Shown: positions 13,134-51,100 of the stretch, piece after piece
Layout: the number at the start of each line of letters is the position of its first letter
How positions within the stretch are numbered: the first letter of the stretch is position 1
NCBI GenBank assembly: GCA_033442325.1
Contig: JAWQFM010000003.1
Span: 2,473,970-2,537,969, forward strand
Direction of reading: 5' to 3'
Length of the DNA: 64,000 nucleotides
Source of the DNA: Salpingoeca rosetta
Lineage: Eukaryota > Protista > Choanoflagellata
Notes under the pieces: model-generated
What the model saw: the letters and a program-made list of their open reading frames with translations, nothing else
Told to the model about the DNA's origin: nothing
Database searches by the model: none
Translations under genes and position numbers: made by a program

Positions 13134-13823
13134 ACAAACAACAACAACAACAACAAACAACAACAACAACAAACAAACAACAACAACAACAACAACCAAC
13201 AACCACACCCGTTCAGGCACAAGTATCCTCTGCAGCAGCAAATGAACCCGCTGTTCTTGCAGCCAAACATGCACCTCCGTGACGCATGCTTTCGGTCATG
13301 GACCAACCCGCATTTCAAAACGGGGGCGCTGCGCCCAAAGCAGACGGCGCCCGCAACAGCAACCAGCACAACCGCACGCAAGCACGCAGAACGGTTGAAC
13401 GACGTGCGTTTCAACCGCCAACGCTCGAGCGTATATGAGGTGGAGGGCGCTGATCGCAGCGACGTTGATGACGATCCGCGACACGACGGCAACAGCAGCA
13501 GCAGCAGTAGTAGTGGTGACAACGAACGTGATGATGGTGGTGATGATGGTATTGGCAACCGTGGTGTTGGAGCACCAGGTACACGTGGCGATGAACACAG
13601 CACCGACACCAGCGCCAACAACACAACACGGGCGAGCACCCTCTCGCAACAGCAGCCGGGCGCAAGTGCGTTTACATTCCCCAGCTTGCATAATGGCAGT
13701 GTTCGACAGCGCAAGTCCAGCCGCGCCGTACGCAACACATCGGACTCATCCTTTGACCCCATGCGTGATGATCTCGACTCTGATTTCACAAATCCGCTCT
13801 ATGAAGCATCGTCTCCTCTGTAG
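11791..13823 (+). CDS. Hypothetical protein with a degenerate Nudix-like N-terminal domain and disordered tail with NPx[FY] motifs (multi-exon)
   Basis: Phase-consistent splicing gives MAYNSSSS/DFHVLVMEQGDSFGLPEGPNYQGEALTACATRIAQRYAQHG/LRKPVSVTIMG..PCTDP/GSLQLQAGIKLIP..ADY/NETVLALAGFF..FSG/VHKYPLQQQMNPLF...DFTNPLYEASSPL*. The first intron is in frame and could be retained. Confidence 0.6.
12958..13203. repeat. Interrupted (CAA)n microsatellite, intronic
   Basis: Seen directly. Confidence 0.9.
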
Positions 13824-14603
13824 CGCTTGGTCGCTTGTTTGTTTGTTTGTGTGCGTGCGTGTGTGTTTGTTTGTTTGTTTGTGTGCGTGCGTGTGTGTGT
13901 TTTTTTTTTTTTGTGTGTGGTGTGGTGTGGTGTTGTGCGTGTGTGTTTGTTTGTTTTGTTTTGTTTTGTTTGTTTTTTGTTGTGTGTGGTGTGGTGTGGT
14001 GTGGTGGTGTGTGTGTGTGTGTGTGTGTCTGTTTGTTTGTTTGTTTGTTTGTTTGTTTGTTTGTTTGTTCGTGTATGGGCTGCACTTCGTGACATCTTTG
14101 TCTCCTCGCTTGTCAATACTTCCCCCTTCTCCCAAAAGTGGTTGCCGCACGATGTACGTGCAATTTAACAGCACAACGCTCAAACTATCAGCTCAAACTA
14201 TCATCATGTGTATGGGATGGTGATCATGGCAGCGTGAAGGTCAGTCAACAAGATGCAAACACACACACACACGCACGCACGCACGCACGCACACACACAC
14301 ATTCGGCAAGCGGTCGGCATAGTTACATGACGCAAGTTGGCAGTGACGACAACGGCAACAAAAGAACAAAAGCGCAGATGTAACACAAGAGGGCACAAAA
14401 ATGGAAACAAGAACATGCGTTGAAGTGAAAAAATACAGCGCGCGGGGCAACACGACGTGTGCACATCATGTCATTGCACCAGAACACATTGGCGAGCAAG
14501 CAAGCAAGAACGAGAAAAGCTTTGATCATCAAAGGAGAGGGACCATGTGATGGTGAGAGAGGGGAGGGACCACGTGATGGTCAAGAGGGGACGGGTGGAA
14601 CGA

Positions 14604-21377
<6,774 letters not shown>

Positions 21378-33974: not shown

Positions 33975-34158
33975 TCAGCTCATGCTGGATCGCTTGTACT
34001 TAACGAGCTGGTAAACGCAAGAAGAAACAAAAAGTAGCAATGTGCACGTGAGCTGTGGATGAATGACAGGCAAGATGGGAGGAAATGACGAACATGACGT
34101 GAACCAAGAACAAAACCATCACACAGACACACAGAAACACAGACGCACACACACACAG

Positions 34159-34230
<72 letters not shown>

Positions 34231-36891
34231 GCCAACCTGCTTAAGGGCGTATTCGAGGATGTGCTTGCCATCGCGCTTTGTCTTGTCGAGGCGATGTGTG
34301 ATGCCCATAATGTCGCCGCACTCGCGCACAAAGTACTCCAGGTCATCCTCCGTGCCTGGCGAGACAAAAACAAAAACAAAAAAAAAAAAGGGGGGGAGGG
34401 GGGGTACGTGGTACGACGAGAGGCAAGCAATCACCATGCGCAAGCACATGTGAGTAGAAGAACACCATCAGAACAAAACCAAAACCACACGCGCACACTA
34501 GCTCACTGATCAAGCACCGCAACATCCCGAATACACCAGTTGCGTTCATCTTCACACACACGCGCATGCATACACACACACATACGCATACGCATACACA
34601 CGCACACACACACATACGCATACGCATACACACGCACACGCACACGCACGCACGCACACACGCACGAACTGACATTTGTTTGCGAGCTGGTTGAGCCTGA
34701 CTTTCTCCGAGGAGAAGCTCTCGTCGAGGTCAAACAGGTCAAGGGCAGGTGGGCCCATCTCCCTGAACGTGGGCGGAAACACGGCAGGCTGCAGTGGTGG
34801 CAGGGGCGCCTCAAACTGCGGCTCAATCAGACGCAACTGCTCGTGTGCGACATCAAGATCTGCATACGCCTGCACGGTGGCTGGGATGTGCTTGGTGGAG
34901 ATACCAAAGAGAGAGCCGGAAAAGAGCGTGGTGAAATCGCGGGGGACGTCATCGCTCTCCTGCAGACACACGCGCGGCTTATCTGCTCGCGTGGTGGTGG
35001 TGGTGGTGGTGGGGGGGGGTGTCGTGTGAGGAATGGTTTGGGTCGAGTGATGAACAGAAAACGAGACTGAGCGCGCCAGCAGGCATGTCGCACACACACA
35101 GACACACAGACAAACAAACAAACACACACAGACACACAGACACACAGACACACAGACACACCTGCGAGCTTCTGCACGTGTGGGATGGGGACGTATTCTG
35201 AAATCTCGGGCTCCTCTGCGTCAATGTGGTTGAGCTCAAAGTCGTCGTCTGTCAACCATGACAGCACAACGTCCAGCAGTGTGCCGTTCTCCTCCTGACG
35301 AACATAACCGGTACAGGGGCGAGGCGGAAGGGAGACGTTGTTTGCGAGACATAAAGAAAGGTGCCGCGAAGGCAGGCAGTCGACAACACGACAAAACATC
35401 AAGCGCACAACAAAGGACACATGACACACACACACACACGCACACGCACGCACACGCACACGCACACACACACACACACGCACACGCACACACCTTGTCC
35501 AGGTACTGGTCACTGAAGATGTGGCAGGAGCCAATCACCGCCAGCTTGCCCGGGCGAGACTACAGACAGCAAACGGCGTGAATAGAAAGCATATACGCAT
35601 GACTTTGAGTGAAACATGGCGCTGAACGTCGACAAGTATTGGCAGCGCGGCGTTGAAAGGAAGAAACCAAAACGACAGACAAAACAACCAGCAACGGGGT
35701 GGGGTACAAACAAATGGCACCACTGGTGGTACATAGAACGCACATCGTTGCTGTAGAATGCGCAGGTTGGGCGGTTGAGCGGGATGGAGACGTTGCCTGT
35801 GCTGAGAACGGGAACAGCCGGTGGCTGCACGCTCAGCGTTGCGCCAAACGGGTACAGGTACTGTAAGCTCATCTGATCAAAGGCCGTATCATCTGCCCTG
35901 CCACTGGGCTGCGGTTTTCCCGCCGCCTTGTTGATTTCCCTGTTCAGCACGCCGTTGGAGACCAGGCACTCCTTCGGGTGGTGGTATTTGTAGAAGGTGG
36001 AGCGCACAACAGCGTCGGCGTTTACCATGACGCCGTATTCCTCCAGCAGGAAGTTGATGTTTGTGTCAAAGCGGGTTTCGCCGCCCTCGCCCACCATGAT
36101 GAGTAGGCTCCCGCCATTCTCCAAGTACTGCCGAATCACCTCAAACTGTGGCGCCAAGACACGGAGGACAGAATGAACACAAATAATGCATGCGCGTGTG
36201 AGGGGAGGGGAGGAGAGGGGAGGGGTGTTGTTCGTGCGTGATACACAGCAAGGAAAGATGCTCCACCGCGTCTACGCAAACTGATACAAGCACATCAAAC
36301 ACCCGTTTGTGCGTGTTGATAGGCGCACACACTTATGAATACTACTCACATAACACACGCACACACACGTACAAAAAACACACGCGCGGACATACGCACA
36401 CAGACACACACACACACACACACTCACGCATACATACGGACACACACAGACACGCATACATACGGACACACACAGACACACACACACACACAGAGCGGCG
36501 ACATTACCTCTCCTGCTGTGAACTTTTGTCGCGGGCCGGCGAAGACAAGGACGCGTGCATCCTCCAGCCTCTCTGATGTCAACTCCTCCTTCAACCTGAA
36601 AACGACACGCCAGACACGTGCAAAGTTGGAAGTGAGCTTCAATGCCCTTCAACCCTCCCCCTCCCTCCGCGAAGGACATTGCGCCGAGAGTTTTGCACAT
36701 GTGCAACAGTCACACCACGCGATTCAGGCCTCGTTTACACCACCCTCTTCACCACGCGCAGCCAGGGCGACTTACGATGCGACTCTCCATGTTGATCTGA
36801 GCCTTCGCGTGAGCTGCTTGAACCCACTTCCAGGAGAGAACACCTCTTTCTTGCCGGCATTGAACAAGAGCAGCGGTTTCTCACTGTCCAT
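33975..36891 (-). CDS. IFT52: Intraflagellar transport protein 52 (IFT-B), multi-exon
   Basis: MDSEKPLLLFNAGKKEVF; FAGPRQKFTAGEFEVIRQYLENGGSLLIMVGEGGETRFDTNINFLLEEYG; YHHPKECLVSNGVLNREI; YPFGATLSV; IEPQFEAPLPPLQPAVFPPTFRE..PPALDLFDLDESFSSEKVRLNQLANKC..DDLEYFVRECG; ends LVKYKRSSMS*. Confidence 0.96.
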
Positions 36892-37185
36892 GTTTGGGTT
36901 CTGATGGCGGCTGAGATCTGCGTACGACAGGGTCGCTGGTCACACAGTCAGGTTTTCCACACCACAACCAAGTCCAGTAAGACGCCTCTATCGTCACAGA
37001 ACGTGCACCACAGCCCGTTGTTGGGAAATTCTAGCCAATCCTTGAAGCGAGGCTTAATGTGTTCCGTCCACGGCTCACTCGCTTCGTCGTCTCGTCGCTC
37101 GTTGAGCTTGCTTGTGTGCGTTTGGTTGGTTGGTGTGGCCGTTGCTGTTTGGTCTGTTGTGCTGCGTTTTCGGTCTCAGCGGGCT

Positions 37186-37192
37186 GTTGCCA
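37186..37192 (+). promoter_or_regulatory. RFX X-box half-site GTTGCCA near the inferred IFT52 transcription start
   Basis: Exact GTTGYCA match, about 110 bp beyond a probable 5'UTR intron of IFT52 (GT at 37078, AG at ~36918). IFT genes are canonical RFX targets. Confidence 0.55.
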
Positions 37193-37289
37193 TTGATGAG
37201 CATTTGTTGGAGTTTTACGTTAATTTTCGTACCTCGACGATCTGCCACATTTTCCACCAAACGCAACCTGTTGTGGTGACAAGGCGCTG

Positions 37290-37305
37290 CCGCGAAAAAT
37301 TCGAA
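37290..37305 (+). promoter_or_regulatory. E2F/CDE plus CHR-like composite element CCGCGAAAAATTCGAA upstream of anillin
   Basis: TTTTCGCGG (reverse strand) directly abuts TTCGAA, ~140 bp upstream of the anillin ATG. Confidence 0.5.
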
Positions 37306-37442
37306 TTCCTCCATCATCCAGCAGAAAGATACACGCACGACCTGCGACCATCGATACCATCGATACAGAGCACCACCACCGACTCAAGAGCAGCACCAGC
37401 AGCATCTCCACATCAGCCCAGCGGGCAGCATAGCGAGCCACC

Positions 37443-38399
37443 ATGGCAGCACGCGTCAAAGCTGACATGCGCCGCATGGTACGCCATGCTTGCGTGTGTT
37501 CATTGGTTGCTGCTTCTGTCGGTCCTTGATTGCGTGACATGCACCACAGCATACAGCCACACACATATACACACAACTACACACACACAACTACACACAC
37601 AGCTACACACACACACACAGCTACACACAGCTACACACAGCTACACACACAGCTACACACACACACAACTACACACACAACTACACACACACACAGCTAC
37701 ACACACAACTACACACACACAGCTACACACACACACAACTACACACACACACAACTCATCTCTGCGAACATGTTGCATGCGCAGATGGAAGAGAAGGCGA
37801 GGCGAAGGCGCACGAGGCAGAGTAACGCCGTGAGACTGGGAGATGGCCCTCGCACGACCGAGCTTCCAAGCCGCAACACATCCCAGCCCACCTCCACGCG
37901 GACATCGGACATTGCACCCATCGGCGATGCCATCCTCGCACAAGAACTGACAAAGCCGCCTCTCAAGAGCGGCACCAGCTCACACAGCATCAGCAGCACT
38001 CGCGGCAAGAGCAGCGGTCGACCCAGCATTGGCCGCCGCCGCAGCTCCTTCGCCCCACAGGACCTCGTCAACAACCCCTTTGGCGGTGACATGCTGCTGG
38101 CTGAACAGGATGAGGAAAACGCTCCCGAGCGCAGTGTACCGAAACAGCACGGCAAGCGGGCCCCGCCGCCTGTCGCACCCAAGCGACACAAAGGTGCACC
38201 TGTGCAGCGGCAGGACTCAAGGGCCGCCCTCGGACAGCTGCAGACCAGCACTGAGCGTGCGTACTCCAAACCAGCCGTGACTGCCCCACGCGCCACGGAC
38301 AAGGGCAGGCGAAGCACGTTCAAGTTTGGAGAGGCAGACGCAGACGCAGCCGCAGAGGATGATGGCACGAAGGGCGTGCGTCGTCGCCCAAAGAAGCAA

Positions 38400-38432
<33 letters not shown>

Positions 38433-40398
38433 TCCTCCAGCAGCAGCACTGCTCCCAGTGCCATCAGCAAGCGCCTCACTCGGCGCGCGTCTGTGGAAAG
38501 CTGCCGTGAGTCTGCATACATGGCGGACGCCCTGCCGTACTGCAAGATCCTCAGCAGCGAGGAAGACGCTGAGCGGGAGACAGAGGTGGATGGGGATGAC
38601 AGTGTGGATGAGAGCCGCATGGATCAAAGTGATCACGGCGACGAAGGCTCTGTTGCAGTGGATGGCGGGAACAAAGACGCTGTGCGCGGCATGCAGGACA
38701 ACTCGGCCGACATGAGTGCAGACTCGAGCTACTATGAGTTCCTGGTTGGTCGCCGCCGCTCTGCAGCACCGTCAGCCACAGCCACAACCGCAGATACAGC
38801 CACGAGCAGCAGCAGTGGTGTGAGAGACGCACGCAACATGGACCAGGCTGAGGGCGGCGAGGATGATGATGATGATGTTGACTGCGAGGATGATGTGAAC
38901 GACGCTGATCAGAGCATTATCAAGGGCACGGCAATCGAGTCTGTGCCCCGCACCAGCAGCACAGACAGTGATGATGCATGGCACGAAGTGGAGACGCTTG
39001 CCGAGTTTGCAGGCACGCCCGTGCCGCCAAAGCCAAAGCGCCACCACCGTGGTGCCGAGGCACGCGCAGCCATCGAACACAGCCACCATGCACACGACAA
39101 GGACGACGAAGAACAAGACGTGCAGGGTCGCCTGAAAGGCAGTGGGAACCGGCAGCTGTCGATGGAGCAACGTGAGTTTGCAACTGCATTGTCCAAGACA
39201 GCGTCCGTGCGCGGTCGTTCCAACTCCATCTGCATGGATGCCCCCGTGTCCCAGCAGCAACACCGCAGCAGCAACCAAGCGGATTCCGATGATGATGGTG
39301 ACGATGATGATATGGTTGTGCCTGCAGACAGCTCGGCTCACTCGCGGCACCTTCGTGCGAGCCAGCCGAACCTGAGCAAGCGCCGTCGTGCCAGCAACGC
39401 TTCTGCCTCCCGCCTTGCAGCTCGCAGCGAGGTTGCACTGGATCGGGTTGGCCTGAACGAGGCATTGTCACCGCCTGACTCGCGCATGATGTCCCCGCGT
39501 CGCGCGTACCTGTGCTCGCCAAACTTTGAACGCACAGCATCTGTGCTTGTTGGCCGCAAGTCATCTGATACCAACCACGAGCTTGAACGCCACGAGAAAG
39601 TGCGTATGTGTGTGTATGTGTGTGGGGGAGGTGCGTGTGGGCGCGTGTTTTTGTGTAAGTGTGTGTGTATGTGTGTATGTGTATGTGTGTGGGTGTGTGT
39701 GTGTGGGTGGGTGTGTATCATGTGAGAGTGGAGGCTTGTGGAGTGGTTCCATCATGAAACTTGTCGCGCCACTCACAAAGGGTGTGATTACTTGTGTGCT
39801 TGCTGCTTGCCTCTTCAGGTAATCACTGCAACAGAGCGCATGTGTCAGTTTTATTCCGAGGCCGACAGTATCGAGCCCCTCTACCACAGGAAGGCGGCGC
39901 AGGTCGCACGCGCAGCCATTCTGGCAAAGGTGAGGAGGCGCATGCGTTTCTGCACGTGCTCGTGTGTGTGCTTGTGGTTGTGTGTGCGCTTGTGGTTGTG
40001 TGTGGATGTGGATGTGTGTGTGATTGACCGAGTGTGTGTGTGTGTGTGTATGTGTGTGTGTGTGTCGCAATAGAGCTTCAATGTAGTACCATCTCATCAC
40101 ACTCAACTCATGTTGGTGGTGTGCTGTTACTTTAAAACCAGAGCGACGAGGGCAAGGTCGATACAGCGCTGACCCGGACGGTGACACTGACGCAGATTCG
40201 GCTGCGGTTGCACTGGTGGGCAACCATCCCCAACCGTGAGGCGTCTTCCTTCTTTCTGTTTGTGACACTCCGGTACAAGGACCAGTCATTTGCCACCCGC
40301 ATGGTTCGTGTGGACGGCAGCAGCGACGCCACAGAGGTTTCCTTGCGGGACACCATCTCCTTGTAAGTTGCGCGTGCACGTGCGTGTATTTGTGTGTA

Positions 40399-40447
<49 letters not shown>

Positions 40448-42430
40448 GCTTCCATGCGTGCCGTGTACGCATGTGCTTCCATGGGCGACAGTTTCACGTG
40501 GATGGGGCATGCAAGTGTGTCTCTTGTGCATTTTACACCACTGCCGTTCATGCAATCGCCTCAACGTGCGTTCACTCTGATGCTCCATCAGCGAGAACGT
40601 GGAGCCGGGCTTCACCGTGGAGGCGCAAGTGTACTGCTACACATTCACGGACCCAGAGGTAAGAGAGTCAGAGTATTGTGTTGCGTGCTGTTCCTTTGTC
40701 ACAACTGTTTACATGCATACACCCCACTCACGCCCACGCACACACTCACGCACAAATTCACGCACACACTGGCGCTCACGCTCACATACATACACACACG
40801 CAACTGCATGCACAACGGCCTCTCGCGTAGCGCGTGCAGGCACAGCGCCGGGTGAGCACGCCCAAAAAGGCCATGGAACGTATGGGCCAGGCTGCGCGGC
40901 ACATTCGCAACGCAACACCACGGAAGCTCAAGAAGTTCAGGCAGATTATTTCGTCAAAACTCAGCGGTGTGTTCATATGTTTCTACTTCTGTTCGCGTCG
41001 TCCGCGCTGTTTGATCACGGGTTGATTGTGCCTGACATGGGGTATAAGCGTTTTAACGAGCTGGCAAACTTGGTGTCAGCTCCTGTTGTCGCAATGACTC
41101 ATGCTCGTCGCTGTGCATGAACAGAGCTCGCGGATTCGCGTTCAAGCCGTGCTGGGTCGCGTGGTCCAGCAACGCCCGAGCGCCCAGCTCGCCCACGCAC
41201 GCGTGAGGGCACAACTCGCGACATCACAAAGGACTTTGTGCAGGTGTGCGTGTGTGTGTGTGTGTGCGGATGTGTACGTCGCTGCACCATATGTGGTCCT
41301 GTTGCTTTCTTGGTCAGTCCAATTTTGTGCGCACGCCGTGGTTCCACTCACGCTGTGCCTTGTCACCCTTGTCTCGACGGTCACTCTGCCACGTGACGTT
41401 TGCAGTTGGCTGAGTTCAAGCTGACGCAGAGCGACATGGGCGACCACCACCTTGACCTGACGCTTGTGCACGGCGAGGACCACCCTGTTGGGGATGTTGT
41501 GTTTGTGTCGTCGCGCATCTCCGCTGTGCAGACGGATGACTACGAGGGGTTCCTCACCTTCAAGACAGACTGTGGCTGGGAGCGCTTCTGGACCGTGCTC
41601 AAGAACGGCGTCATGTCCCAGTACACGCAGATTAAGCCCCGCCAACTCCTGGTACACACTCGCACACACGCTCTCTCTCTCACAAGCATACACACACACA
41701 CACACACACACAACCGTTCAAACAAGTTGGTTCGTCTTGTGGTCAAACACGGTGTGGGATGCTGATATTCACCGTGTTTTTGTTGCTGCTGCTGTTGTTG
41801 TTCTTCTTCTTCTTGTTCTTCTTATTCTCACCACTGCCGTGCTGGTTTTGGTGACTTGTGTGTTGTTGTGTTGTGGTGTGCAACAGGCGACGACGGACCT
41901 GTCCACCTTGCCCCCAAACACACACGTACAACGTGTGTCTCGGCAGGAGTGTGCACGGCACCATTCCTTTGATCTTCGCGGTGAGTTTGATTTGCGGCAT
42001 GTAGCGTGTGGCATGCCACTGGTCGCAAGCACATACAAGCAAGTCATTGGTTGCTCGTTGTGTTTTGTGTTGCTTTGTCCCCTGATCTCACACCCCTTGC
42101 TCTGTTTGGTGGTGACGCTTCCAGCACTGAGCCCAATTGCAGAGGAGATTGTGCTTCTGCGGGTTGCCGGCGACTCAAAGGTGTGTGCATGTGCGTGTGT
42201 TTGTATGTGTGTTTGTATGTGTTTGTTTGTATGTGTGTTTGTATGTGTTTGTTTGTATGTGTTTGTTTGTATGTGCGTGTGTGTGCTTGTGCATTCTTGC
42301 TCGTTTCATCCGCCAACACCCCCTGCCCTCCCTCCGCCCCAATTTCCATCCACCACAGGAGCACCAAACCGCTTGGCGTGCTGCGCTTTCAAACACTCTC
42401 ACTCGCCTTCAAGCCTGGTCCACCGCCTAA
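37443..42430 (+). CDS. ANLN: Anillin homologue: long disordered N-terminus, anillin-homology (RBD/C2) region and C-terminal PH domain
   Basis: Exon 1 MAARVKADMRRM (37443-37478); large exon 37785-39599. AH/C2-like region: TVTLTQIRLRLHW..ISFENVEPGFTVEAQVY. PH: EGFLTF..GWERFWTVLKNG...RVSRQECARHHSFDL...AGDSKEHQTAWRAALSNTLTRLQAW (cf. anillin REFCARRNTFEL..SADTKEE..W..L...IRLW). Rhotekin-like identity is not fully excluded. Confidence 0.8.
37555..37757. repeat. Intronic minisatellite of (AC)n-AGCT/AACT units
   Basis: Seen directly in anillin intron 1. Confidence 0.85.
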
Positions 42431-43067
42431 CTCCCGACAGCCATCAAAGCAACCCACTCACACCACACCAAACACCACACACCACACACCACACCACCAC
42501 ACTCGTTCGCTTCCTGCTTGTTCTGCTTACTCGATCCAGCAAAGTGTGTTTCTGTTGAGGAGAAATTACAAAAGTCTTCCAAGAAGTTTCGGTTGCGCCT
42601 CAGGCCAAGGTGGAAAAAAAAAAAGAAAAATTCGCACAACCCAACACAAACAAGCAAAGCAAAGGAAGCAAGCAAGCAAGCAAGCAAGCAAGGAGGCGTT
42701 TGTTTTGTTTCGCAGCTGGTGTGCGTTGGCTGCGAGAGTGAGTGTGCATTGTGATTGGTGGGTTGGATTGTGTGTGTGTTGTCGGAGGCACCACCAACAC
42801 CGAAGCAGCAAAGACAGCGACAGCAAAGCAAAGCAAGCAAGCAGTTCGACTGTCGCAGGCCTGGACTGCGCGCGCGTGTGTGCGTGTGTTTGTGCGTGAG
42901 ACTGAGGCATCCGCAACTTCAGCCCCCAACGACAGCGAACAACAACACCCCTCGCTTGACGTGAGGTGGCACATAAGGGTGGATTGTGCGTGAGTGTGTG
43001 CGTAAGTGTGAGTGTGAGAGGGAGAGAACTTGACAGACTTGACACGAAAACAAGAGCGCCGCCAGCG

Positions 43068-43625
43068 ATGGATCCCGTCAACTCCTTTGCGGTAGAGGCT
43101 GACGACGAAATCAAAAGTGAGCACATTGATCGAGAAATGCCTGTGCGTGCTTTGCGTCTGTGCGCGCCTTGCGCTCGCTCGCGCTTGCACAAGCTGTGTG
43201 AAGTGGGTTGAGCCGTTTTAATCTGCTCATCTGTGGTTTTGCCTTGATGTCAATGCCAGATGTGCGCCTTCAGCTCAAGGCCCTAAGTGGCCGAACATCC
43301 AAGAAGGTGGAGTTGCTTCGCGACATGAACGAGTTCTTCACCCGCCAGGTGAGGCCGCTGTGCCTTCGCATTGTCGTCTGTGTGCAGTGTGCATCGTGTT
43401 GGCCGTGTGACGCTGATGTCTGCTTGTAGACTCTTGTGCGGCCGCGTTGGTGCCTTTGCCCACCACCCACGGCTGCACACTCACACGCCGCCACTGTCCA
43501 TCCCAACAACAGGCCGACATTGAACTCCAGTATGCGCGGCAGCTGGATGGCCTGTATGCCAAGTTTGTCAAGCCGCGCAGTGAGCGGGGAGCCGTGGCCA
43601 ACGTCGCCAAGGCCCTCAGGTGTGC

Positions 43626-43665
<40 letters not shown>

Positions 43666-46600
43666 GTGTGTGTGTGTGGTTTTCGTTATTCGCAGTCTTG
43701 CGCACTGCACATTTGCACACCGCCCACGGCGTGTGTCGTAGCCTCGTTTTCACTCATGTGTCTCCTCTGTTCTCGCACTCACAACCATACTCGCCAATGC
43801 GCCAACCCATTCACCCACGTGTGCGTTTGCAGGCGGCCCACGCAAGAAGGCGAAGAGAACGAGGCGGTTGCGTCCCGCCTGGATGGCGAGACGCACGGGC
43901 AGGTCATGGACGTGTGGTATGTGCTGTTGGAGCAGATGCGCAAACGCGCAGACGCCCGGCAGCGGTTTGCCACAAACCTCGCAGACGAAATGAAGGTGTG
44001 CGCGTGTGCGTGTGTGTGAGTGCGCGCGCGCGCGTGGCTGTGTGTGAGTGAGCGAGTGGGAGTTGGGGAGGGGAGTGAGTGGATGAATGAGTGGGTCAGA
44101 GGCGGCGGTGTGAAGATGACATGTCGTCATGCATTCATGCGCAACACTTGTTGACGTGCTCGTGATCCATTGCATGTGTAGCATCCTCACCTCCATCTGC
44201 ACATCCTACCACACACCCTACCACACACACGCACACACCATGCCCGCACCAGTCGCGGTTGGACTGCCTAGAGCGCGAGAGTGTGGCTGCATCGAAGCGC
44301 TGCCTTGAACTTGGCGGTCATATCCAGGTCTGTACTGCAATCGTGCACGAATGCACTGTGTCGGAATTGCTCGCCTGCCTGTGTGTGCGTGTGTCTGTGT
44401 TTGTGTGTGCGTGTGTGTGTGTGTTTGTGTGTGCGTGCATATGTGTGTGTGCTTGCATACCTCTTTCTTTTCTGTGTGTGTGTGCTATCTACCCATGCTG
44501 ACACGTTTGTGCTTGTGGGTTGCAATGCGTGTTGTCTTCTTCGCAGCTTGAGCTTCAGCGGTCGTTCAAGCAAGTTGACGACACCCTCAAAGTCTACTAC
44601 TCTTCGCAAAGTACGCAGCCACACACCGCATCTCTGTGTGTTGGTGTTTGTATTGTTGCACGCACATCCACGTGTTGTGTGCGTGTGTGTGTGTGTTGTT
44701 TGTGCCCCCCTCGCTCCCCCTCCATTTCTTCATGTGCTTCGCTCACTCGCCCGCTTGATGGCTGCGTCCGTGATAATGATGCAATGACAACGCGTGTGTG
44801 GTTGATAGCCAAGTGCGCAAAGGCAGAGGAGAGCTGGGACAAGGCGAAGGAGAAGGGTCAAATCAAGAAGGGCGAGAAAGTGCGTTGCATTGATGAGTTC
44901 TGCCTGCACAACAGCTAACCATGACTGTGCATGGCGCAGTGCCCACGCTTCTGTGCTGCTGCGTCCTCACAAACGCTACATCACACACTCACTCACTCAC
45001 TCACTCACTCACTCTCCCACACGCACTCTCTCTCTCTCACGCACTCTCTCGCTCTCTCATTCGTGCACACGTTGCGCTGTCATGTTACTCCGGCCCCCAG
45101 ATGAAAGAGAAGGTGGTTCTCGCTGAGAAGAAGGCCGTTGCTGCGCGCAATGAATACGTCCTCTCCCTCTTCTCCGCCAACGCGTGCAAGCGGCGCTACT
45201 ACAAGGTGCGCTGTGAGCGCATGCATGTGTCTGCGCGAGCGTGCGTGTGTGTGTGTGTTTACAGGTCATGCTGCCAGTCAGTGTCAGTGTCACCCCTCAC
45301 CCATCACTCATCGTCGTCATTGCTTGCTTGTCCCTGCCACCGCGGCTTGTACGTGTGCTACCCCCTCCCCTCTTCTTCTTCTTCTTCTTCTTCTTCTTCT
45401 TCTTCTTCTTCTTCTTCTTCTTCTTCTTCTTCTTGAACTCCAATTTCCGTTCTGTCCCTGCAGCGTGAGATCAGCCACTTGGTGGACGCGATGGACAAGT
45501 ACTTCCACTCCAACTTCCGCCACATCTTCAAGATCTTCCGTGATCTCTCCATGCAGGTTTGTACCGCGTCCAGCTGGGCAATGCGTGCCCGACACGTTTG
45601 AGCTCTGGCGTCGTGTTGGTTGTGTCTGTGGTGTGTGTGTTGTGCGACTGCATTCCCCCTTTTCCTTTCATTTTGCCTCATGCCTGATCGGTTGTGATCG
45701 CCCCAAACGCCCACACGCCCACATGCATTCAAACACGCACACACACACGCACACCGCATACATATTCAACACATACACACACATATTCATACACTTCATA
45801 CACACACCCCATACACGCACATTCAACATAACACACACACATGTATTCACACACGCGCATCCCACAGGCGGAGGCGATTGTGACCAAGTCGATTGAGACG
45901 GTGCACGACACGGCGAGCAGCGTCAGCGCCAAGGCGGAGAAGGAGAAGTTCTTCAAGGACAACCGCGTGTACTTTATGGACCGCCGCATGTTCGAGTTTG
46001 TCAAGTTCAGGCCAGACGAGGTGCGCCACGTGTCTTGATCGTGTGCGTGTGTGCGCGGGTGTACGTGCTTGTGTTTTGGTTGTTTATGTGTGTGTGTGTG
46101 TGTGCATATGCTTGTATTGTTGTATTTGTGCGAGTATGAGAGTTTCTTGCGTCTGTCGCCTTGCCCTCAGTGCATGCGTTGTACATCATCGCTGTTTGGA
46201 TGTGACCATTTCATACCCTTGCCGCAATTTCTTTGATAATCGTTGCATATATATTCTCACCCTCGTTCCTCCTCGATGTGTGTCTGTGTGCGTGTTTGCT
46301 TTATGCACGCGTGCGCGCTGGTTTCAGCCGATGGATGTTCAATGCACACCAGACACGCTGGGAGACCTCATTGGCCGCTATCAGGACCTCGAAGCGATGG
46401 TAAGCCCATTTGCAGCTATTGTGCAATTGCAATGCCTGCTCGTCACTTGGATGTACCCTGTCCTTCCTTGTTCACGACTGCCGTTGCTGCTGCTGGGGTG
46501 AACTGTGTCATCCAACGTGCCTGATTCCTTGTGTGCTCACCGAACACTTTCGCTTTGAAATGCACACGCGCATGGCTTGTGTGGTGACGTGTGCGTGTGT

Positions 46601-48096
46601 GTGCGTGTGTGTGTATGTTCAGGTTGCCAAACTCGATCATCAGATTACGGAGGAGAAGAAGACGCTCAAGACCATTGGTGTTCTTCGTCGCGAAATCGGA
46701 CATTCGCTCCAGGTACACACACACGCGCACGCACACACATACACACACATACGCACTCGCTTACTTGCTCTTTTAGTATTACCCCCATATTCGTGTGTGT
46801 GCGCATGTTTGCTGTGTGCCCTGCTGTGCGTGTATCCTGTGCGTGCCACTAGCACACATCTCTCTTTATCCACATACTCTCACAGGCTCACACACACACA
46901 CACACAACATTTGCGCGTGCGCATAGGCGAATGATGAAGGGGTGCCCAAGTGCGTGGAGAACACAAGCATGTACACAGAAAGCTACGCCCGGCTTGTGTT
47001 GAAGAAGGTGCACAAAGCATCCCTTGTCAGCCAGCTCAAGGTCCTTGGCGAGGTTCGTTCATCAATACACACACACACACATACACACACACATAATTGC
47101 ATGCTTGCGGCTGCGATTGTGTCTGCCATAACGCTTCTTGAATCGGTGCGAACTAACACACACATACACACACACCAAATTTCCATTGCTCTTCACTGTT
47201 GTCCACAGGCACTGGGACCAAACAAACCCATGAGCTCGCACACATACGAAGACCAACTCTCTGGTCAGCAAACTGACGTTGTCTGTCTCCTCACTTTGCA
47301 TTGTTTGTTGTACTTTGACGTTTCTTCAGTGTCAGCTCCTTACCCCGACCCGGCTCACTCCATTTACTGTTCGCTGCGTGTGCATTGCATGTGTGTCTGT
47401 GTCTGTATACGAACGCATATATGTGTGTGTGATCAGAATCCGAGACGGAGGAGGAAGAGGACTTTGATTACCTTCAGTCCTCGCACAAGAGTGGCAGCTT
47501 GCGCCGCGCCTCGTGAGTTCTCCACTTGTTTTCACACAGCTGCTGCACCACGTGCACTACATGCCTTTGTCCGAATACCTCATTCTGTTTCTTTGCTTGA
47601 GCCACTCCTGCTGACCTCGTTTACCATTATCACCATCACCACCATCAATCATCATCGATGCATCATCAATCATCAGGCTGGCGCACCGCACGTCCACATC
47701 GTCGCTTCCGCCGGAGACAACCAACGGCAGCGCACAGGTACAGCTGACGCGTGACTTGCACGAACACAATACCGTGACACTGTGACCACCACGAGCGAGT
47801 GGCTGTTGCTGTCCCGCATGAGTCATGCCAATGCTGAGTGAACAGTGACGTCTGATTCACAAAGTGCTTCGTTGCCGTTGTGTACGTATGTCCTTGTTCG
47901 TCTTCCACAGGGCACGTCAACGCACACACCAGATGCTCAGTCCATTCGCAGCCGCAGGTTCGTGTTGTTGACACACACTGGCCATCTCAACCCATGCGCA
48001 CACACACACACACACACGCCATGCTTATTTGTTGTTCGACTTGTCAATGCTCCTGTTCTTGTATTGCTGCCTGTACTTTGCAGCCTCACACGTGCC

Positions 48097-48161
<65 letters not shown>

Positions 48162-51100
48162 GCACGCACGCATACACACGTGATGATTGCGCGGCGTCCC
48201 AGCGGGTCTGCTGCGTCCACGCTGTCTGCGCTGCAGAACGAGGAAGTGGCACGCAGCCGGCTCAACACCGCCACCACACACGTGCCCGCCAGCGAAGATG
48301 GCGGTGGGGACGACAGCAGCGGCGGTATTAGTGCGGGGTCATCGCATATGAGTGTGCGGCGCCCGGCACCAGCACCACCGGGACCGCCGGCTGGACGCTC
48401 CTCTCCTCGTCTCGGCCGCAGCGCTCGCAGGGGCAAGCGCGTACGTTGCAGGGGCATCGCCCGCGCTGTGTGTCTGTGTGTGTCTGTGTCTGTATGTGTG
48501 TCTGTGTGTCTGTGTGTCTGTATCTGTGTCTCTGTGTCTGCCTATGTTGGTTTTGTTCTTGTCACTAATGTTTTACTGTCAGGTGCTCACCACGTTTGTG
48601 GCGTGCAGTCAGCAGCAGCCGCTCATCCCATTATTGACCCCCCTCCCCCTCTCTTTTTTCTCCTTCAGCCGGAGCGCCCGCCTGATCCGCGCCGCGGTGC
48701 GTCTGTGAGCGCCGGTACCGGGCGACCAAAACCGCCGGCAAAGCCGCCATTGCCTGCAGGCAAAGTCACACCCAAGGCCACGCCCAAGCGGCCGCCACGC
48801 CCCACGCCTGCCAAGCGCCCCGAGCCAGCGGGGGCGGGCGAACGCCTCTCGCCTGCAGCGCTGAACGCCTCCAAGTTTGGCAGCGTGCTTGATGTGATGG
48901 CGAGCGCCACGAACAGGGAGGTGCCACTGCTGGTTGAGAGTTGCATCAAGGCCATCCGCGATATCGGCATGAAGGAGGAAGGCATCTTCAGGGTGCCCGG
49001 CTCATCCTTGCAGGTAGCACACCACGTGGACTGCGCATGCGTGCAGTGTGCGTGCATGTGTTTGCCGGTGTGTGTGTGTGTGTGTGTGCATGTGTGTCTA
49101 CGTGCGTGCATGTGCATGTGTGTCTACGTGCGTGCATGTGCATGTGTGTGTATGTGTGTGCGTGTCTGCAACAATGTCAATGTACTCAGTATGTGCGTGC
49201 TCTGTAGCCCACTTCACACTCGGCTCACCACATGTCACCACCACCAAAACCAAACCAAACCAAATCAAACCCAACCTTTCTTTTCCTTGGAACAGATTGA
49301 CGAGCTGAAGGAGGCGTTTGAGCGCGGCCAGGATCCGTTGGCAGACGGCGTTCCATCACACATCCACCCAGCTGCCATTGCAGGTGACGCTTTTTATTGC
49401 TGTGCTGGCTTGGGTTTTTTGTGCATGTGCACAAACACGCTCAAAAGCGTGCTTCATTGTTCTTCATTGTGCTTGGTGCCGCCCATGTCGTCATCGCAAA
49501 CATACAACCACAATTGCACATATTCACAAACACATACGCGCACATGCACACCTGCAGGCCTGTTGAAGTTGTTCCTGCGTGAGCTGGCGGATCCCGTCAT
49601 GACCAACGATAACTACTCCCTCCTCATCCAGGTTCGTGTGTGTGCGTGTGTGTGCGTGTGTGTGCGTGTGTGTGCGTGTGTGTGCGTGTGTGTGCGTGTG
49701 TGTGCGTGCACGCGTTCATACATGAGTGCGTGGTTGTCTGTCTGTGGTTATGAACGCAAGCTGTCGCTTGTTTCTTCTTCGCTGCCTACTCTTCACATAC
49801 ACAGTGCCCTCACCCATTGTCAAACCAAACCAAACCATACCAAACTACCCACTCCCCACCACCACCACCGCCACGACAGATTGGCAACCTGCCTGACCAG
49901 CAGAAGCGGCTGCAGGGCATCCGGCGAATTGTGCACGAGCGGCTGCCGCCCGCAAACAGGCGCGTGTTGGAGGTGCTCATGCCGTTCCTGTATGAGGTGG
50001 CGCAACACGAGGCCGACAACAAGATGGGCACGTCGAACCTGGCCCTCGTGTTTGGGCCAACGCTCATGCCAGCGCCCAAGCATGACATGGGCGCAATGCT
50101 GCGTGATGCAACCACTGTCAACACCATCATGAGCTGCCTCATTGAGTACCACGAGTGGATCTTTGCGTCGGCAGCAGCACAACACGACGGCAGTGCTTCC
50201 ACCACAGATGCAACCGCACCCGAAGCAGAAGCATCACCGAAAGACAGTGCCGCCTCCGCCACCACACCAGCCACAGCAGCCACATCATCAACAGCAGCAT
50301 CAGGGGCAACAGCCACGGGTGATTCGAAGCCTGTTGCAGCCAAGCGCAAGCCGACACCGCGCGTCGTGACATATGCGCTGGCGCTGCACGACTACCAGGG
50401 GCGAAACCCGTCCGAGCTGTCGTTTGCAAAGGGCGCGCGCATCCCCGTGCACGAGAAGACAGACCCCAATTGGTGGAAGGGCGAGCTTGACGGAAAGAAA
50501 GGGTATGTCGCTGCGGCGTACGTGAAGGATGCCGGCCTTGAAGTAGACGCGAAACCAGCGACAACAGCAGCAACAGCAGCAACAGCAGGCGGGAATGACG
50601 GCACGACTTCTGCTGCAGCAAACCAGACGCCCCAAGCAGCGCCGCGGTCACAGAAGAAGGTTCCGCCTGCCGTTCGTCCCCGCACCAAGTCCACAGCAAG
50701 CATGCGGGGCAAGCTTGAGGAGCACGGCAGCGGTGTGCAGCAGGCCGGACCCGTGGCTGCCGCAGCAAAGACATCGTCATTGTCGTCGTCGTCGTCGTCA
50801 CCACCACCAGCAGCACCTGCACCGGCACCTCCACGAGCACCATCGGATGAGCTGGAGAAGGAAGCTGAGGAGACGGACGACGAGGACTCGCCAACAACAC
50901 ACACAGGGACGCTCGACCTCGATGCGCGGGCACAGTCGGCGTTTGTGCTACCAACGAGACCCCACCCAGCTGCTGCTGTTGGCAGTGGTGGACACGGTGA
51001 CGCCGGTGACGAGACAGACGGAGAAAGTGTCGGGTACCTTGACATTGGCGAGATTCAGTCTCGTCGAGCAACGCTGGCCTCTGAGCGGTCGCCCGGTGTA

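What the first reader, a model, noticed from the sequence alone, without database searches (positions are those of the whole stretch)
36892..37442. Flagellum gene and cytokinesis gene share one promoter with RFX and E2F/CHR-like sites
Seen: IFT52 and anillin start codons are 551 bp apart. GTTGCCA (37186-37192) sits on the IFT52 side and CCGCGAAAAATTCGAA (37290-37305) on the anillin side. Known: RFX drives IFT genes; CDE/E2F-CHR elements bind DREAM/MuvB at G2/M genes such as animal anillin; choanoflagellates retract and rebuild the flagellum around division. Inference: a compact switch coupling or insulating the mitotic and ciliogenic programmes, and a hint of animal-like DREAM cis-grammar before animals.
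Basis: partly seen in the sequence, partly recalled or inferred. Interest (0 to 1): 0.7.

Follow-up and report, generated by a model that had tools for sequence, protein, structure and literature searches.

The report
IFT52–anillin promoter with E2F/CHR site
Two back-to-back genes of the choanoflagellate Salpingoeca rosetta, one for building the flagellum and one for cell division, start only about 100 bases apart, and the division gene's start carries a short motif of the kind animals use to time mitotic genes, which a second choanoflagellate keeps at the same gene.

Summary
The window is Salpingoeca rosetta. IFT52 (minus strand) and the genome's only anillin-domain gene, PTSG_09415 (plus strand), have start codons 551 bp apart, and both motifs sit at the stated coordinates.

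RNA-seq shows most of the 551 bp is 5'UTR. IFT52 starts at about 37177-37184 and anillin at about 37265-37296, so the untranscribed core is only about 100 bp.

The E2F/CHR reading is supported by sequence evidence:
- CCGCGAAA-AA-TTCGAA lies at the anillin start.
- Its class occurs once in the 64-kb window and once in 22 kb of Monosiga brevicollis, there in front of the anillin ortholog, which is again head-to-head with IFT52.
- Genome-wide, E2F-like sites next to TTYGAA prefer fixed spacings and precede NCAPH, a CDC20/Fizzy gene, a kinesin-5-like gene and a TTK/Mps1-like kinase.
- LIN54-like, LIN9 and E2F genes are present.

The RFX reading is weak. GTTGCCA lies 2-15 bp upstream of the IFT52 start, but published data list no high-confidence RFX motif for IFT52 and no significant change in the cRFXa mutant.

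Nothing shows a coupling switch. The scan had already noted E2F/CHR elements at two other loci of this genome.

The parts
36774..36891 (-). IFT52 coding exon 1 (39 codons); intron 36594-36773 follows
   Evidence: Pfam IFT52_GIFT. tblastn of P0002 residues 1-39 at 100% identity. Spliced reads join 36593 to 36774 in all four runs.
36892..37184 (-). IFT52 5'UTR, about 290 nt, with no upstream ATG
   Evidence: IFT52-sense reads are continuous from exon 1 up to about 37188. The script finds no ATG in the 293 nt.
37177..37184 (-). Main IFT52 transcription start cluster; a weak tail of starts reaches about 37296
   Evidence: Five molecule ends at 37177 (X21) and six at 37184 (X22). Depth falls from 17-21 to 3-6 across this point.
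37186..37192 (+). GTTGCCA, the RFX monomer core, 2-15 bp upstream of the IFT52 start
   Evidence: The consensus GTTGCCA and the position rule (60% of motifs within 50 bp of a start site) come from PMC10530576. In 12-mer context it reads GCTGTTGCCATT. Every instance read in File S7 (part 1 of 5) has A or G where this has T, and EGD78348 is absent from the whole file.
37193..37289 (.). AT-richer core between the two main start sites (46% GC over 37185-37290)
37290..37297 (+). CCGCGAAA, an E2F-like (CDE-like) site matching 7 of 8 positions of GCGSSAAA
   Evidence: Genome-wide spacing preference relative to TTYGAA.
37300..37305 (+). TTCGAA, a CHR-type hexamer (TTYRAA), 2 nt after the E2F-like site
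   Evidence: TTCGAA is a functional CHR variant in mammals, and CHRs lie on or near start sites (PMC4176359). LIN54 binds TTYRAA (PMC4974476).
37265..37296 (+). Approximate anillin transcription start region
   Evidence: In X23, anillin-sense depth is 0 over 37189-37260, 0.86 in 37261-37296 and 3-7.5 further on.
37297..37442 (+). Anillin 5'UTR, with no upstream ATG; holds a tandem CCATCGATA x2 at 37348-37365
37443..37478 (+). Anillin coding exon 1 (12 codons); intron 37479-37784; exon 2 starts at 37785
   Evidence: Loose read ends at 37478 continue with the first bases of exon 2. tblastn of P0001.

Best explanation
This is a compact bidirectional promoter of Salpingoeca rosetta. IFT52 and the single anillin-domain gene are transcribed outward from start sites about 100 bp apart, and each start has its own proximal element.

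At the anillin start sits a composite of an E2F-like site and a CHR hexamer (CCGCGAAA-AA-TTCGAA). Inferred, not shown: an E2F/DP plus MuvB-type (LIN54-like) complex binds it and limits anillin transcription to cycling or late-cycle cells, as CDE/CHR and E2F/CHR elements do at animal G2/M genes, human ANLN among them.

GTTGCCA, 2-15 bp upstream of the IFT52 start, is a sub-threshold RFX monomer site. It may add a small RFX input to IFT52.

The two genes are regulated separately. The pairing itself is old, being shared with Monosiga brevicollis, but no evidence shows that it works as a switch.
For: Shown directly:
- Gene identities and coordinates.
- Start sites and strand-specific coverage from three raw RNA-seq runs.
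- X22 has the highest IFT52 depth and no anillin reads, so expression is uncoupled.

Comparative:
- In M. brevicollis, IFT52 is again head-to-head with the anillin ortholog (tblastn E 1e-26; start codons 724 bp apart).
- The only CGCG-N3-5-CHR composite in that 22-kb locus lies 89 bp upstream of the anillin start codon, with the CHR end toward the gene.
- Shuffles of the M. brevicollis spacer give P 0.025 for any such composite and 0.005 for one so placed.

Genome-wide:
- CGCGAAA-N(0-8)-TTYGAA has 38 hits against 14 for the reversed control. They concentrate at N0 (18) and N2 (12, this site's class).
- GCGSSAAATTYGAA has 13 hits against 0 for the control.

Genes downstream of such sites, with the CHR end nearest the gene:
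- condensin Cnd2/NCAPH and a CDC20/Fizzy-family gene;
- the kinesin EGD77373, whose best human hit is KIF11; there the composite lies within about 25 bp upstream of the annotated start;
- a TTK/Mps1-like kinase;
- an FHA protein.

Candidate binding proteins in the genome: one gene with tandem TCR/CXC domains, LIN9/DIRP, and several E2F_TDP genes.

Literature:
- TTCGAA and CTTGAA are functional CHRs.
- CHRs sit at start sites.
- ANLN, CDC20 and NCAPH are human conserved-CHR genes (PMC4176359).
- S. rosetta anillin rises together with Polo and Aurora kinases in colonies (PMC4054682).
Against: - There are no binding data and no cell-cycle-resolved expression data for this organism.
- The bare pattern CCGCG-N5-TTYGAA is hardly enriched genome-wide (63 against 48 for the control). 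The signal appears only when the spacer completes an E2F-like site, a refinement I made after seeing the hits.
- The spacing between CGCG and the CHR is 5 nt here and 3 nt in M. brevicollis, against 4 nt in the animal CDE/CHR.
- The Polo-box gene and the cyclin genes have none of my exact patterns nearby.
- About a quarter of the composite hits lie in coding exons, and many flanking genes could not be named.
- For RFX: IFT52 is not significantly changed in the cRFXa mutant and has no high-confidence motif. The 7-mer alone is expected 0.14 times in this interval.
Confidence: 0.6

Rival explanations
1. This is an ordinary bidirectional promoter, and both motifs are chance matches without function.
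For: Divergent start-site pairs are common in S. rosetta (PMC12572184). GTTGCCA is not over-represented in the window. CCGCG-N5-TTYGAA is only 63 against 48 genome-wide. The motifs were picked by eye.
Against: The composite is unique in 64 kb and lies at the RNA-seq start site. The same class is unique in 22 kb of M. brevicollis and sits at the orthologous gene. There is a strong spacing preference, and mitotic genes lie downstream of sister sites.
Confidence: 0.15
2. GTTGCCA belongs to the cell-cycle promoter rather than to IFT52. On this reading, RFX-core sites accompany E2F/CHR composites at S. rosetta mitotic genes, echoing the cell-cycle role of RFX in fungi.
For: An RFX 7-mer lies within 120 bp of the composite at 4 of 6 cell-cycle promoters (anillin, TTK-like, kinesin-5-like, CDC20/Fizzy), against 2 of 42 other composite sites (my Fisher estimate is about 0.001, post hoc). 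The kinesin-5-like gene EGD77373 has a strict RFX motif and is up, not down, in the cRFXa mutant (logFC +0.74, FDR 2.7e-4). cRFXa mutants proliferate slowly, while IFT52 itself does not respond.
Against: The sample is small and the subset was defined after the fact. Over all composite sites the 6-mer is not enriched (P 0.2). The positions and orientations of the RFX cores differ between promoters. Here the 7-mer is right at the IFT52 start and about 80-110 bp from the anillin start.
Confidence: 0.15
3. One reading: the shared core mechanically couples or insulates the ciliogenic (RFX) and mitotic (DREAM) programmes. Selection for that coupling is why the gene pair has been kept.
For: The head-to-head pair is kept in M. 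brevicollis although the two genomes share little synteny. Relative to the neighbouring FCH-RhoGAP-SH3 gene, the pair has been inverted as a unit. The flagellum retracts at cytokinesis (PMC13081904). The start sites are about 100 bp apart, and weak IFT52 starts reach into the composite.
Against: No expression or binding data show an interaction. IFT52 does not depend on cRFXa. The pair is absent in Trichoplax and Nematostella. A three-gene microsynteny block could persist by chance. One RNA sample shows IFT52 without anillin, but three samples cannot reveal any reciprocal pattern.
Confidence: 0.1

Closest known systems
Animal CDE/CHR and E2F/CHR-like promoter elements bound by DREAM/MuvB (LIN54 on the CHR, E2F4-DP on the CDE)
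   Same: A TTYRAA hexamer (TTCGAA, a validated variant) lies at the transcription start of a late-cell-cycle gene. A G/C-rich E2F-type half lies just upstream of it, on the side away from the gene. Human ANLN is itself a conserved-CHR gene (PMC4176359, PMC4974476).
   Different: The gap between CGCG and the CHR is 5 nt here and 3 nt in M. brevicollis, not 4. Genome-wide, S. rosetta prefers a full E2F-like 8-mer abutting the CHR or 2 nt away from it. Binding and cell-cycle timing are untested. The organism is not an animal.
RFX monomer motif of S. rosetta ciliary promoters (Coyle et al. 2023, PMC10530576)
   Same: The GTTGCCA core is identical. It lies within 50 bp of a ciliary gene's start, as do 60% of the published instances.
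   Different: The extended 12-mer has T where the listed instances have A or G, so it is not among the published high-scoring sites. IFT52 is not significantly reduced in the cRFXa mutant.
Divergent (bidirectional) promoters of the compact S. rosetta genome (PMC12572184)
   Same: Two active start sites flank one short, AT-richer gap.
   Different: Here the pairing is also found in M. brevicollis. That paper did not examine conservation of pairs.
Plant DREAM-like complexes with TSO1/TCX (tesmin-family) proteins
   Same: The tandem CXC DNA-binding architecture is shared. In S. rosetta the two TCR domains lie about 770 bp apart on one strand.
   Different: From my own knowledge, plant G2/M promoters are described mainly through MSA (Myb) and E2F sites. 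I ran no comparison of plant cis-elements here.

Membership tests
CHR promoter element (MuvB/LIN54 target) | Hexamer TTYRAA, with the outer TT and AA intact | tested here: met
   TTCGAA at 37300-37305. Consensus from PMC4974476. TTCGAA is functional in mouse Bub1 (PMC4176359).
CHR promoter element (MuvB/LIN54 target) | Located on or very close to the transcription start site | tested here: met
   Anillin-sense reads begin within 37261-37296, and the composite is at 37290-37305. Resolution is about 35 bp.
CHR promoter element (MuvB/LIN54 target) | [quoted passage not shown] | not testable with these tools
   No synchronised S. rosetta data are available. Indirect support: one of three RNA samples has no anillin reads, and anillin rises with Polo and Aurora kinases in colonies (PMC4054682).
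CHR promoter element (MuvB/LIN54 target) | Bound by LIN54 within MuvB/DREAM | not testable with these tools
   The genome encodes a tandem-TCR/CXC gene, a DIRP (LIN9) gene and E2F_TDP genes.
CDE/CHR tandem element | G/C-rich CDE exactly 4 nt upstream of the CHR | tested here: inconclusive
   CCGCG is followed by 5 nt (AAAAA) before TTCGAA. The gap is 4 nt only if the CDE is read as CGCGA. M. brevicollis has 3 nt before CTTGAA. In mammals only 23% of CHR promoters have a CDE.
E2F site | TTTSSCGC (reverse complement GCGSSAAA) | tested here: inconclusive
   CCGCGAAA matches 7 of 8 positions. Perfect 8-mers abutting a CHR occur 13 times in the genome against 0 for the control.
RFX site (X-box) | Monomer core GTTRCY / GTTGCCA | tested here: met
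   37186-37192. Consensus as in PMC10530576.
RFX site (X-box) | Second inverted half-site (RGYAAC after 0-3 nt) | tested here: not met
   The sequence after GTTGCC is ATTGATGAG. By eye, no RGYAAC half follows in the required 0-3 nt register. Monomer sites are nevertheless the form reported in S. rosetta.
RFX site (X-box) | The target gene depends on RFX | tested here: not met
   Published RNA-seq gives IFT52 (EGD78348) cRFXa logFC -0.33, FDR 0.45, with Sro_RFX_motif FALSE. The gene is absent from the motif-instance file. The paralogs cRFXb and cRFXc have not been tested.
Anillin | C-terminal anillin-homology domain followed by a PH domain | tested here: met
   PF08174 at 48 bits over residues 667-846. 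Weak PH match at 881-979. Best solved-structure hits are human anillin 4xh3 and its PH domain 2y7b.

The most novel reading that the evidence does not exclude
The IFT52-anillin head-to-head unit has been kept since the common ancestor of S. rosetta and M. brevicollis, even through a local inversion. On this reading it was kept because its roughly 100-bp core is a shared regulatory node. An E2F/MuvB-type complex at the anillin start and an RFX factor at the IFT52 start would influence each other, tying flagellar rebuilding to exit from division.
Probability: 0.1. Interest if true: 0.8.

Novelty: new variant of a known kind. Interest (0 to 1): 0.5.

Why it matters
If the composite works as inferred, the promoter logic that animals use to time mitotic genes (E2F plus CHR, read by DREAM/MuvB) was already in place in the unicellular relatives of animals. 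It used the same hexamer at the same place, the start site, in front of some of the same genes: anillin, CDC20, condensin H, kinesin-5 and Mps1.

I found no paper in the held library that describes CHR-type elements in choanoflagellates or other unicellular holozoans.

S. rosetta can be transfected and edited, so this 100-bp promoter is a small, directly testable case. It has one side for an RFX test and one for an E2F/CHR test.

The RFX part adds little to what is published. The 'switch' idea remains speculation.

Tried and rejected
- Rfam scan of 36700-37500 for a small RNA under the coverage hump: nothing.
- Word-based protein search with the anillin C-terminal half: only self was found, so the M. 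brevicollis ortholog had to be reached through IFT52 and tblastn.
- Exons were never joined. IFT52 and anillin were searched exon by exon by reference. The full proteins used (P0001, P0002, P0007) are database entries.
- Alternative readings of GAAAAATTCGAATTCC as a heat-shock element (needs a 5-bp GAA/TTC period) or a STAT GAS site (TTCNNNGAA): the spacing does not fit (by eye).
- Cross-matching my composite hits with the Polo-box gene and nine cyclin-domain loci: none lies nearby.
- The kinesin beside L027 is KIF1A-like, with the composite in the opposite orientation. It was dropped from the list.
- General excess of RFX 6-mers near all composite sites: not significant.
Eight of the 12 N2-class sites stay unexamined, and the LIN54-like gene could not be read.
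- First solved-structure search with residues 600-990 gave nothing. Residues 640-990 gave anillin.
- Trichoplax and Nematostella IFT52 neighbours: no anillin.

Full report
WHAT IS THERE

The window is from Salpingoeca rosetta. The large plus-strand exon at 37785-39617 is 99% identical to PTSG_09415 (P0001, 990 aa). The same locus is found on GL832982.1 of GCA_000188695.1.

IFT52 lies on the minus strand.
- Exon 1 is 36774-36891, followed by intron 36594-36773.
- Its identity rests on Pfam IFT52_GIFT on two exons and on 99% identity to the S. rosetta protein P0002.

The plus-strand gene starts at 37443.
- Exon 1 ends at 37478 and exon 2 starts at 37785.
- It has an anillin-homology domain (48 bits) and a weak C-terminal PH domain.
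- Its best solved-structure match is human anillin.
- It is the only PF08174 candidate in the 55.4-Mb genome.

The gap between start codons is exactly 551 bp, and both motifs are at the stated coordinates. I searched exon by exon and did not join exons. The full-length proteins used are database entries.

WHERE TRANSCRIPTION STARTS

Three raw, stranded RNA-seq runs of 2026 were laid on 36505-37555.

IFT52-sense reads run without a break from exon 1 up to about 37188.
- Five molecule ends fall at 37177 and six at 37184.
- A thin tail reaches about 37296.

Anillin-sense reads in X23 are absent from 37189-37260. They appear in the 37261-37296 bin and continue to 37478, where they splice to exon 2.

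Most of the '551-bp promoter' is therefore 5'UTR: about 290 nt for IFT52 and about 150 nt for anillin. Neither 5'UTR holds an upstream ATG. The region between the main starts is about 100 bp and AT-richer.

GTTGCCA lies 2-15 bp upstream of the IFT52 start. The E2F-like/CHR composite lies at the anillin start.

X22 has the highest IFT52 depth and no anillin reads at all, so the two sides are not co-regulated.

THE RFX SIDE

Coyle et al. 2023 (PMC10530576) showed three things:
- cRFXa controls ciliogenesis in S. rosetta.
- GTTGCCA-type monomer motifs are enriched at ciliary promoters.
- 60% of those motifs lie within 50 bp of the start site.

The site here fits in core sequence and position. Two of their results count against it.
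- File S6 lists IFT52 (EGD78348) with Sro_RFX_motif FALSE, cRFXa logFC -0.33 and FDR 0.45.
- EGD78348 does not appear in the motif-instance file. Every listed instance I read has A or G after GTTGCCA, where this site has T.

The 7-mer occurs 16 times in the window, fewer than in shuffles.

M. brevicollis has GTTGCCT in the same orientation 88 bp from its IFT52 start codon. A 6-mer match there is not significant, and its IFT52 is not in the published motif list either.

Verdict: a plausible weak site with no functional support.

THE ANILLIN SIDE

CGCG-N5-TTYGAA occurs once in 64 kb, against 0.13 expected.

In mammals TTCGAA is one of the three commonest functional CHRs, and CHRs lie on or near start sites. 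ANLN, CDC20 and NCAPH are on the list of late genes with conserved CHRs (PMC4176359). LIN54 reads TTYRAA (PMC4974476).

Comparative test.
- M. brevicollis IFT52 (P0007) was located on CH991546.1.
- Its divergent neighbour, an unannotated 800-aa gene, is the anillin ortholog (tblastn of P0001 residues 588-908, E 1e-26, plus the PH part). The start codons are 724 bp apart.
- The class CGCG-N3-5-{TTTGAA, TTCGAA, TTTAAA, CTTGAA} occurs once in that whole 22-kb locus. It reads CGCGCAGCTTGAA and lies 89 bp upstream of the anillin start codon, with the CHR end toward the gene.
- Markov shuffles of the spacer give 0.025 for any hit and 0.005 for a hit so placed.
- I widened the class after seeing the sequence, so these values are optimistic.

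Genome-wide test.
- The spacers are far from random, however. Many complete an E2F-like site.
- CGCGAAA-N(0-8)-TTYGAA has 38 hits against 14 for the control.
- Split by spacing, that is N0 18, N1 4, N2 12 (this site's class), N3 2, N5 1, N8 1, and none at N4, N6 or N7.
- The perfect E2F 8-mer abutting the CHR (GCGSSAAATTYGAA) has 13 hits against 0.

Which genes carry such sites?

I had sequence for 50 sites. I ranked exon-like frames with a codon model trained on the IFT52 and anillin exons, then named them with Pfam and solved-structure searches.

With the CHR end nearest the gene, the sites precede:
- condensin Cnd2/NCAPH (same N2 class as anillin);
- a CDC20/Fizzy-family gene;
- the kinesin EGD77373, whose best human hit is KIF11;
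- a TTK/Mps1-like kinase;
- an FHA protein with a long disordered tail, which from memory recalls Ki-67 (the FHA match is weak).

I identified EGD77373 because the published RFX instance GTTGGCAACGGC lies at L057:4443. The composite there lies within about 25 bp upstream of the annotated start.

Two more sites, in the other orientation, lie beside an E2F-family gene and a zf-PARP gene.

About a quarter of the sites are inside coding exons, and many neighbours have no recognisable domain. One kinesin neighbour is KIF1A-like and was dropped. The Polo-box gene and the cyclin loci have none of these exact patterns nearby.

Canonical mitotic genes are roughly 1-2% of the gene set (my own rough estimate, not computed here). 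Six late-cell-cycle genes, counting anillin and the tentatively named FHA protein, among roughly 38 non-coding sites is well above that. This is not a formal annotated test.

Candidate readers of the composite are present in the genome:
- one gene with two TCR/CXC domains about 770 bp apart;
- a DIRP/LIN9 gene;
- several E2F_TDP genes.

THE GENE PAIR

S. rosetta and M. brevicollis share little synteny (PMC4054682), yet the head-to-head pair is kept.

The next gene (FCH-RhoGAP-SH3) is also nearby in both species. It lies downstream of anillin in S. rosetta and downstream of IFT52 in M. brevicollis. The pair has therefore been inverted as a unit.

In Trichoplax and Nematostella, IFT52 has other neighbours.

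This is compatible with constraint on a shared promoter. It is also compatible with a small block surviving by chance. Divergent active start-site pairs are common in this genome (PMC12572184).

HOW IT MOST LIKELY WORKS

Shown:
- two start sites about 100 bp apart;
- independent expression of the two genes;
- the position of both motifs;
- conservation of the pair and of the composite class;
- the genome-wide spacing preference;
- mitotic genes downstream of sister sites.

Inferred:
- an E2F/DP plus LIN54-MuvB-type complex binds the composite and restricts anillin to cycling cells;
- RFX contributes weakly, if at all, to IFT52.

Not supported: a coupling or insulating switch.

NOVELTY

RFX control of cilia in S. 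rosetta is published. Searches of the held library found no description of CHR-type elements in choanoflagellates or Capsaspora.

This scan had already noted E2F/CHR elements at two other loci of the same genome (s1-444850 and s1-444872). My genome-wide and comparative tests agree with those notes in substance. I could not reproduce the Polo kinase example with my patterns.

The spacing differs from the animal 4-nt rule, so I class the element as a variant of a known kind.

Noticed in passing
L031:1475-1488, L033:1475-1488, L018:1480-1493; also G000 contig 20 at 447185-447198: A 14-bp palindrome, TGTCAA-NN-TTGACA, has 47 sites in the genome against 1 for the reversed control. Four copies lie 22-34 bp upstream of a CGCG-N5-TTYGAA composite, including those before the NCAPH and CDC20/Fizzy genes. 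The anillin promoter has only a half-site (GTGACA, 37275-37280). The half-sites recall TALE homeodomain sites (my recollection). What binds it is unknown.
   Followed up: partly
window 37186-37192; L042 about 4479; L057:4443-4454; L031 about 1540: An RFX 7-mer core lies within 120 bp of the E2F/CHR composite at 4 of 6 cell-cycle promoters, against 2 of 42 other composite sites (post hoc). The kinesin-5-like gene EGD77373 has a strict RFX motif and is up-regulated in the cRFXa mutant.
   Followed up: partly
window 37009-37188: RNA-seq depth in the distal IFT52 5'UTR is about twice that of the coding exons. Opposite-strand reads, 10-100% of the sense depth, pile up toward 37184. This may be a library artefact at the mRNA 5' end or a short antisense or promoter-associated RNA. 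Rfam finds nothing.
   Followed up: partly
window 37348-37365: A tandem CCATCGATA x2 lies in the anillin 5'UTR. On the other strand it reads TATCGAT twice, close to the insect DRE TATCGATA (my recollection). It was not seen in the other cell-cycle promoters inspected.
   Followed up: no
window 33975-50524 compared with L011:6413-18352: A three-gene microsynteny block (IFT52, anillin, FCH-RhoGAP-SH3) is shared between S. rosetta and M. brevicollis, with the IFT52-anillin pair inverted as a unit. The M. brevicollis RhoGAP gene is under-annotated: tblastx finds colinear exons at 13660-18352 where only two short genes are called.
   Followed up: partly
L043:4497-4509 and L044:4474-4486 (G000 contig 3, 1549896 and 1555573): Two identical CGCGAAATTTGAA sites lie 5.7 kb apart, each upstream of a copy of the same 219-aa exon with no Pfam match. 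This is a tandem gene duplication that carried its promoter element along.
   Followed up: no
L055:4494-4506 (G000 contig 18, 911493): An E2F-like/CHR composite lies about 1.1 kb upstream of an E2F-family gene (E2F_TDP domain), in the opposite orientation. This could be auto-regulation.
   Followed up: no
window 37560-37760 and 36340-36500: Long CA-rich microsatellites fill the first introns of both genes. They account for all the extra genomic matches to this region.
   Followed up: no
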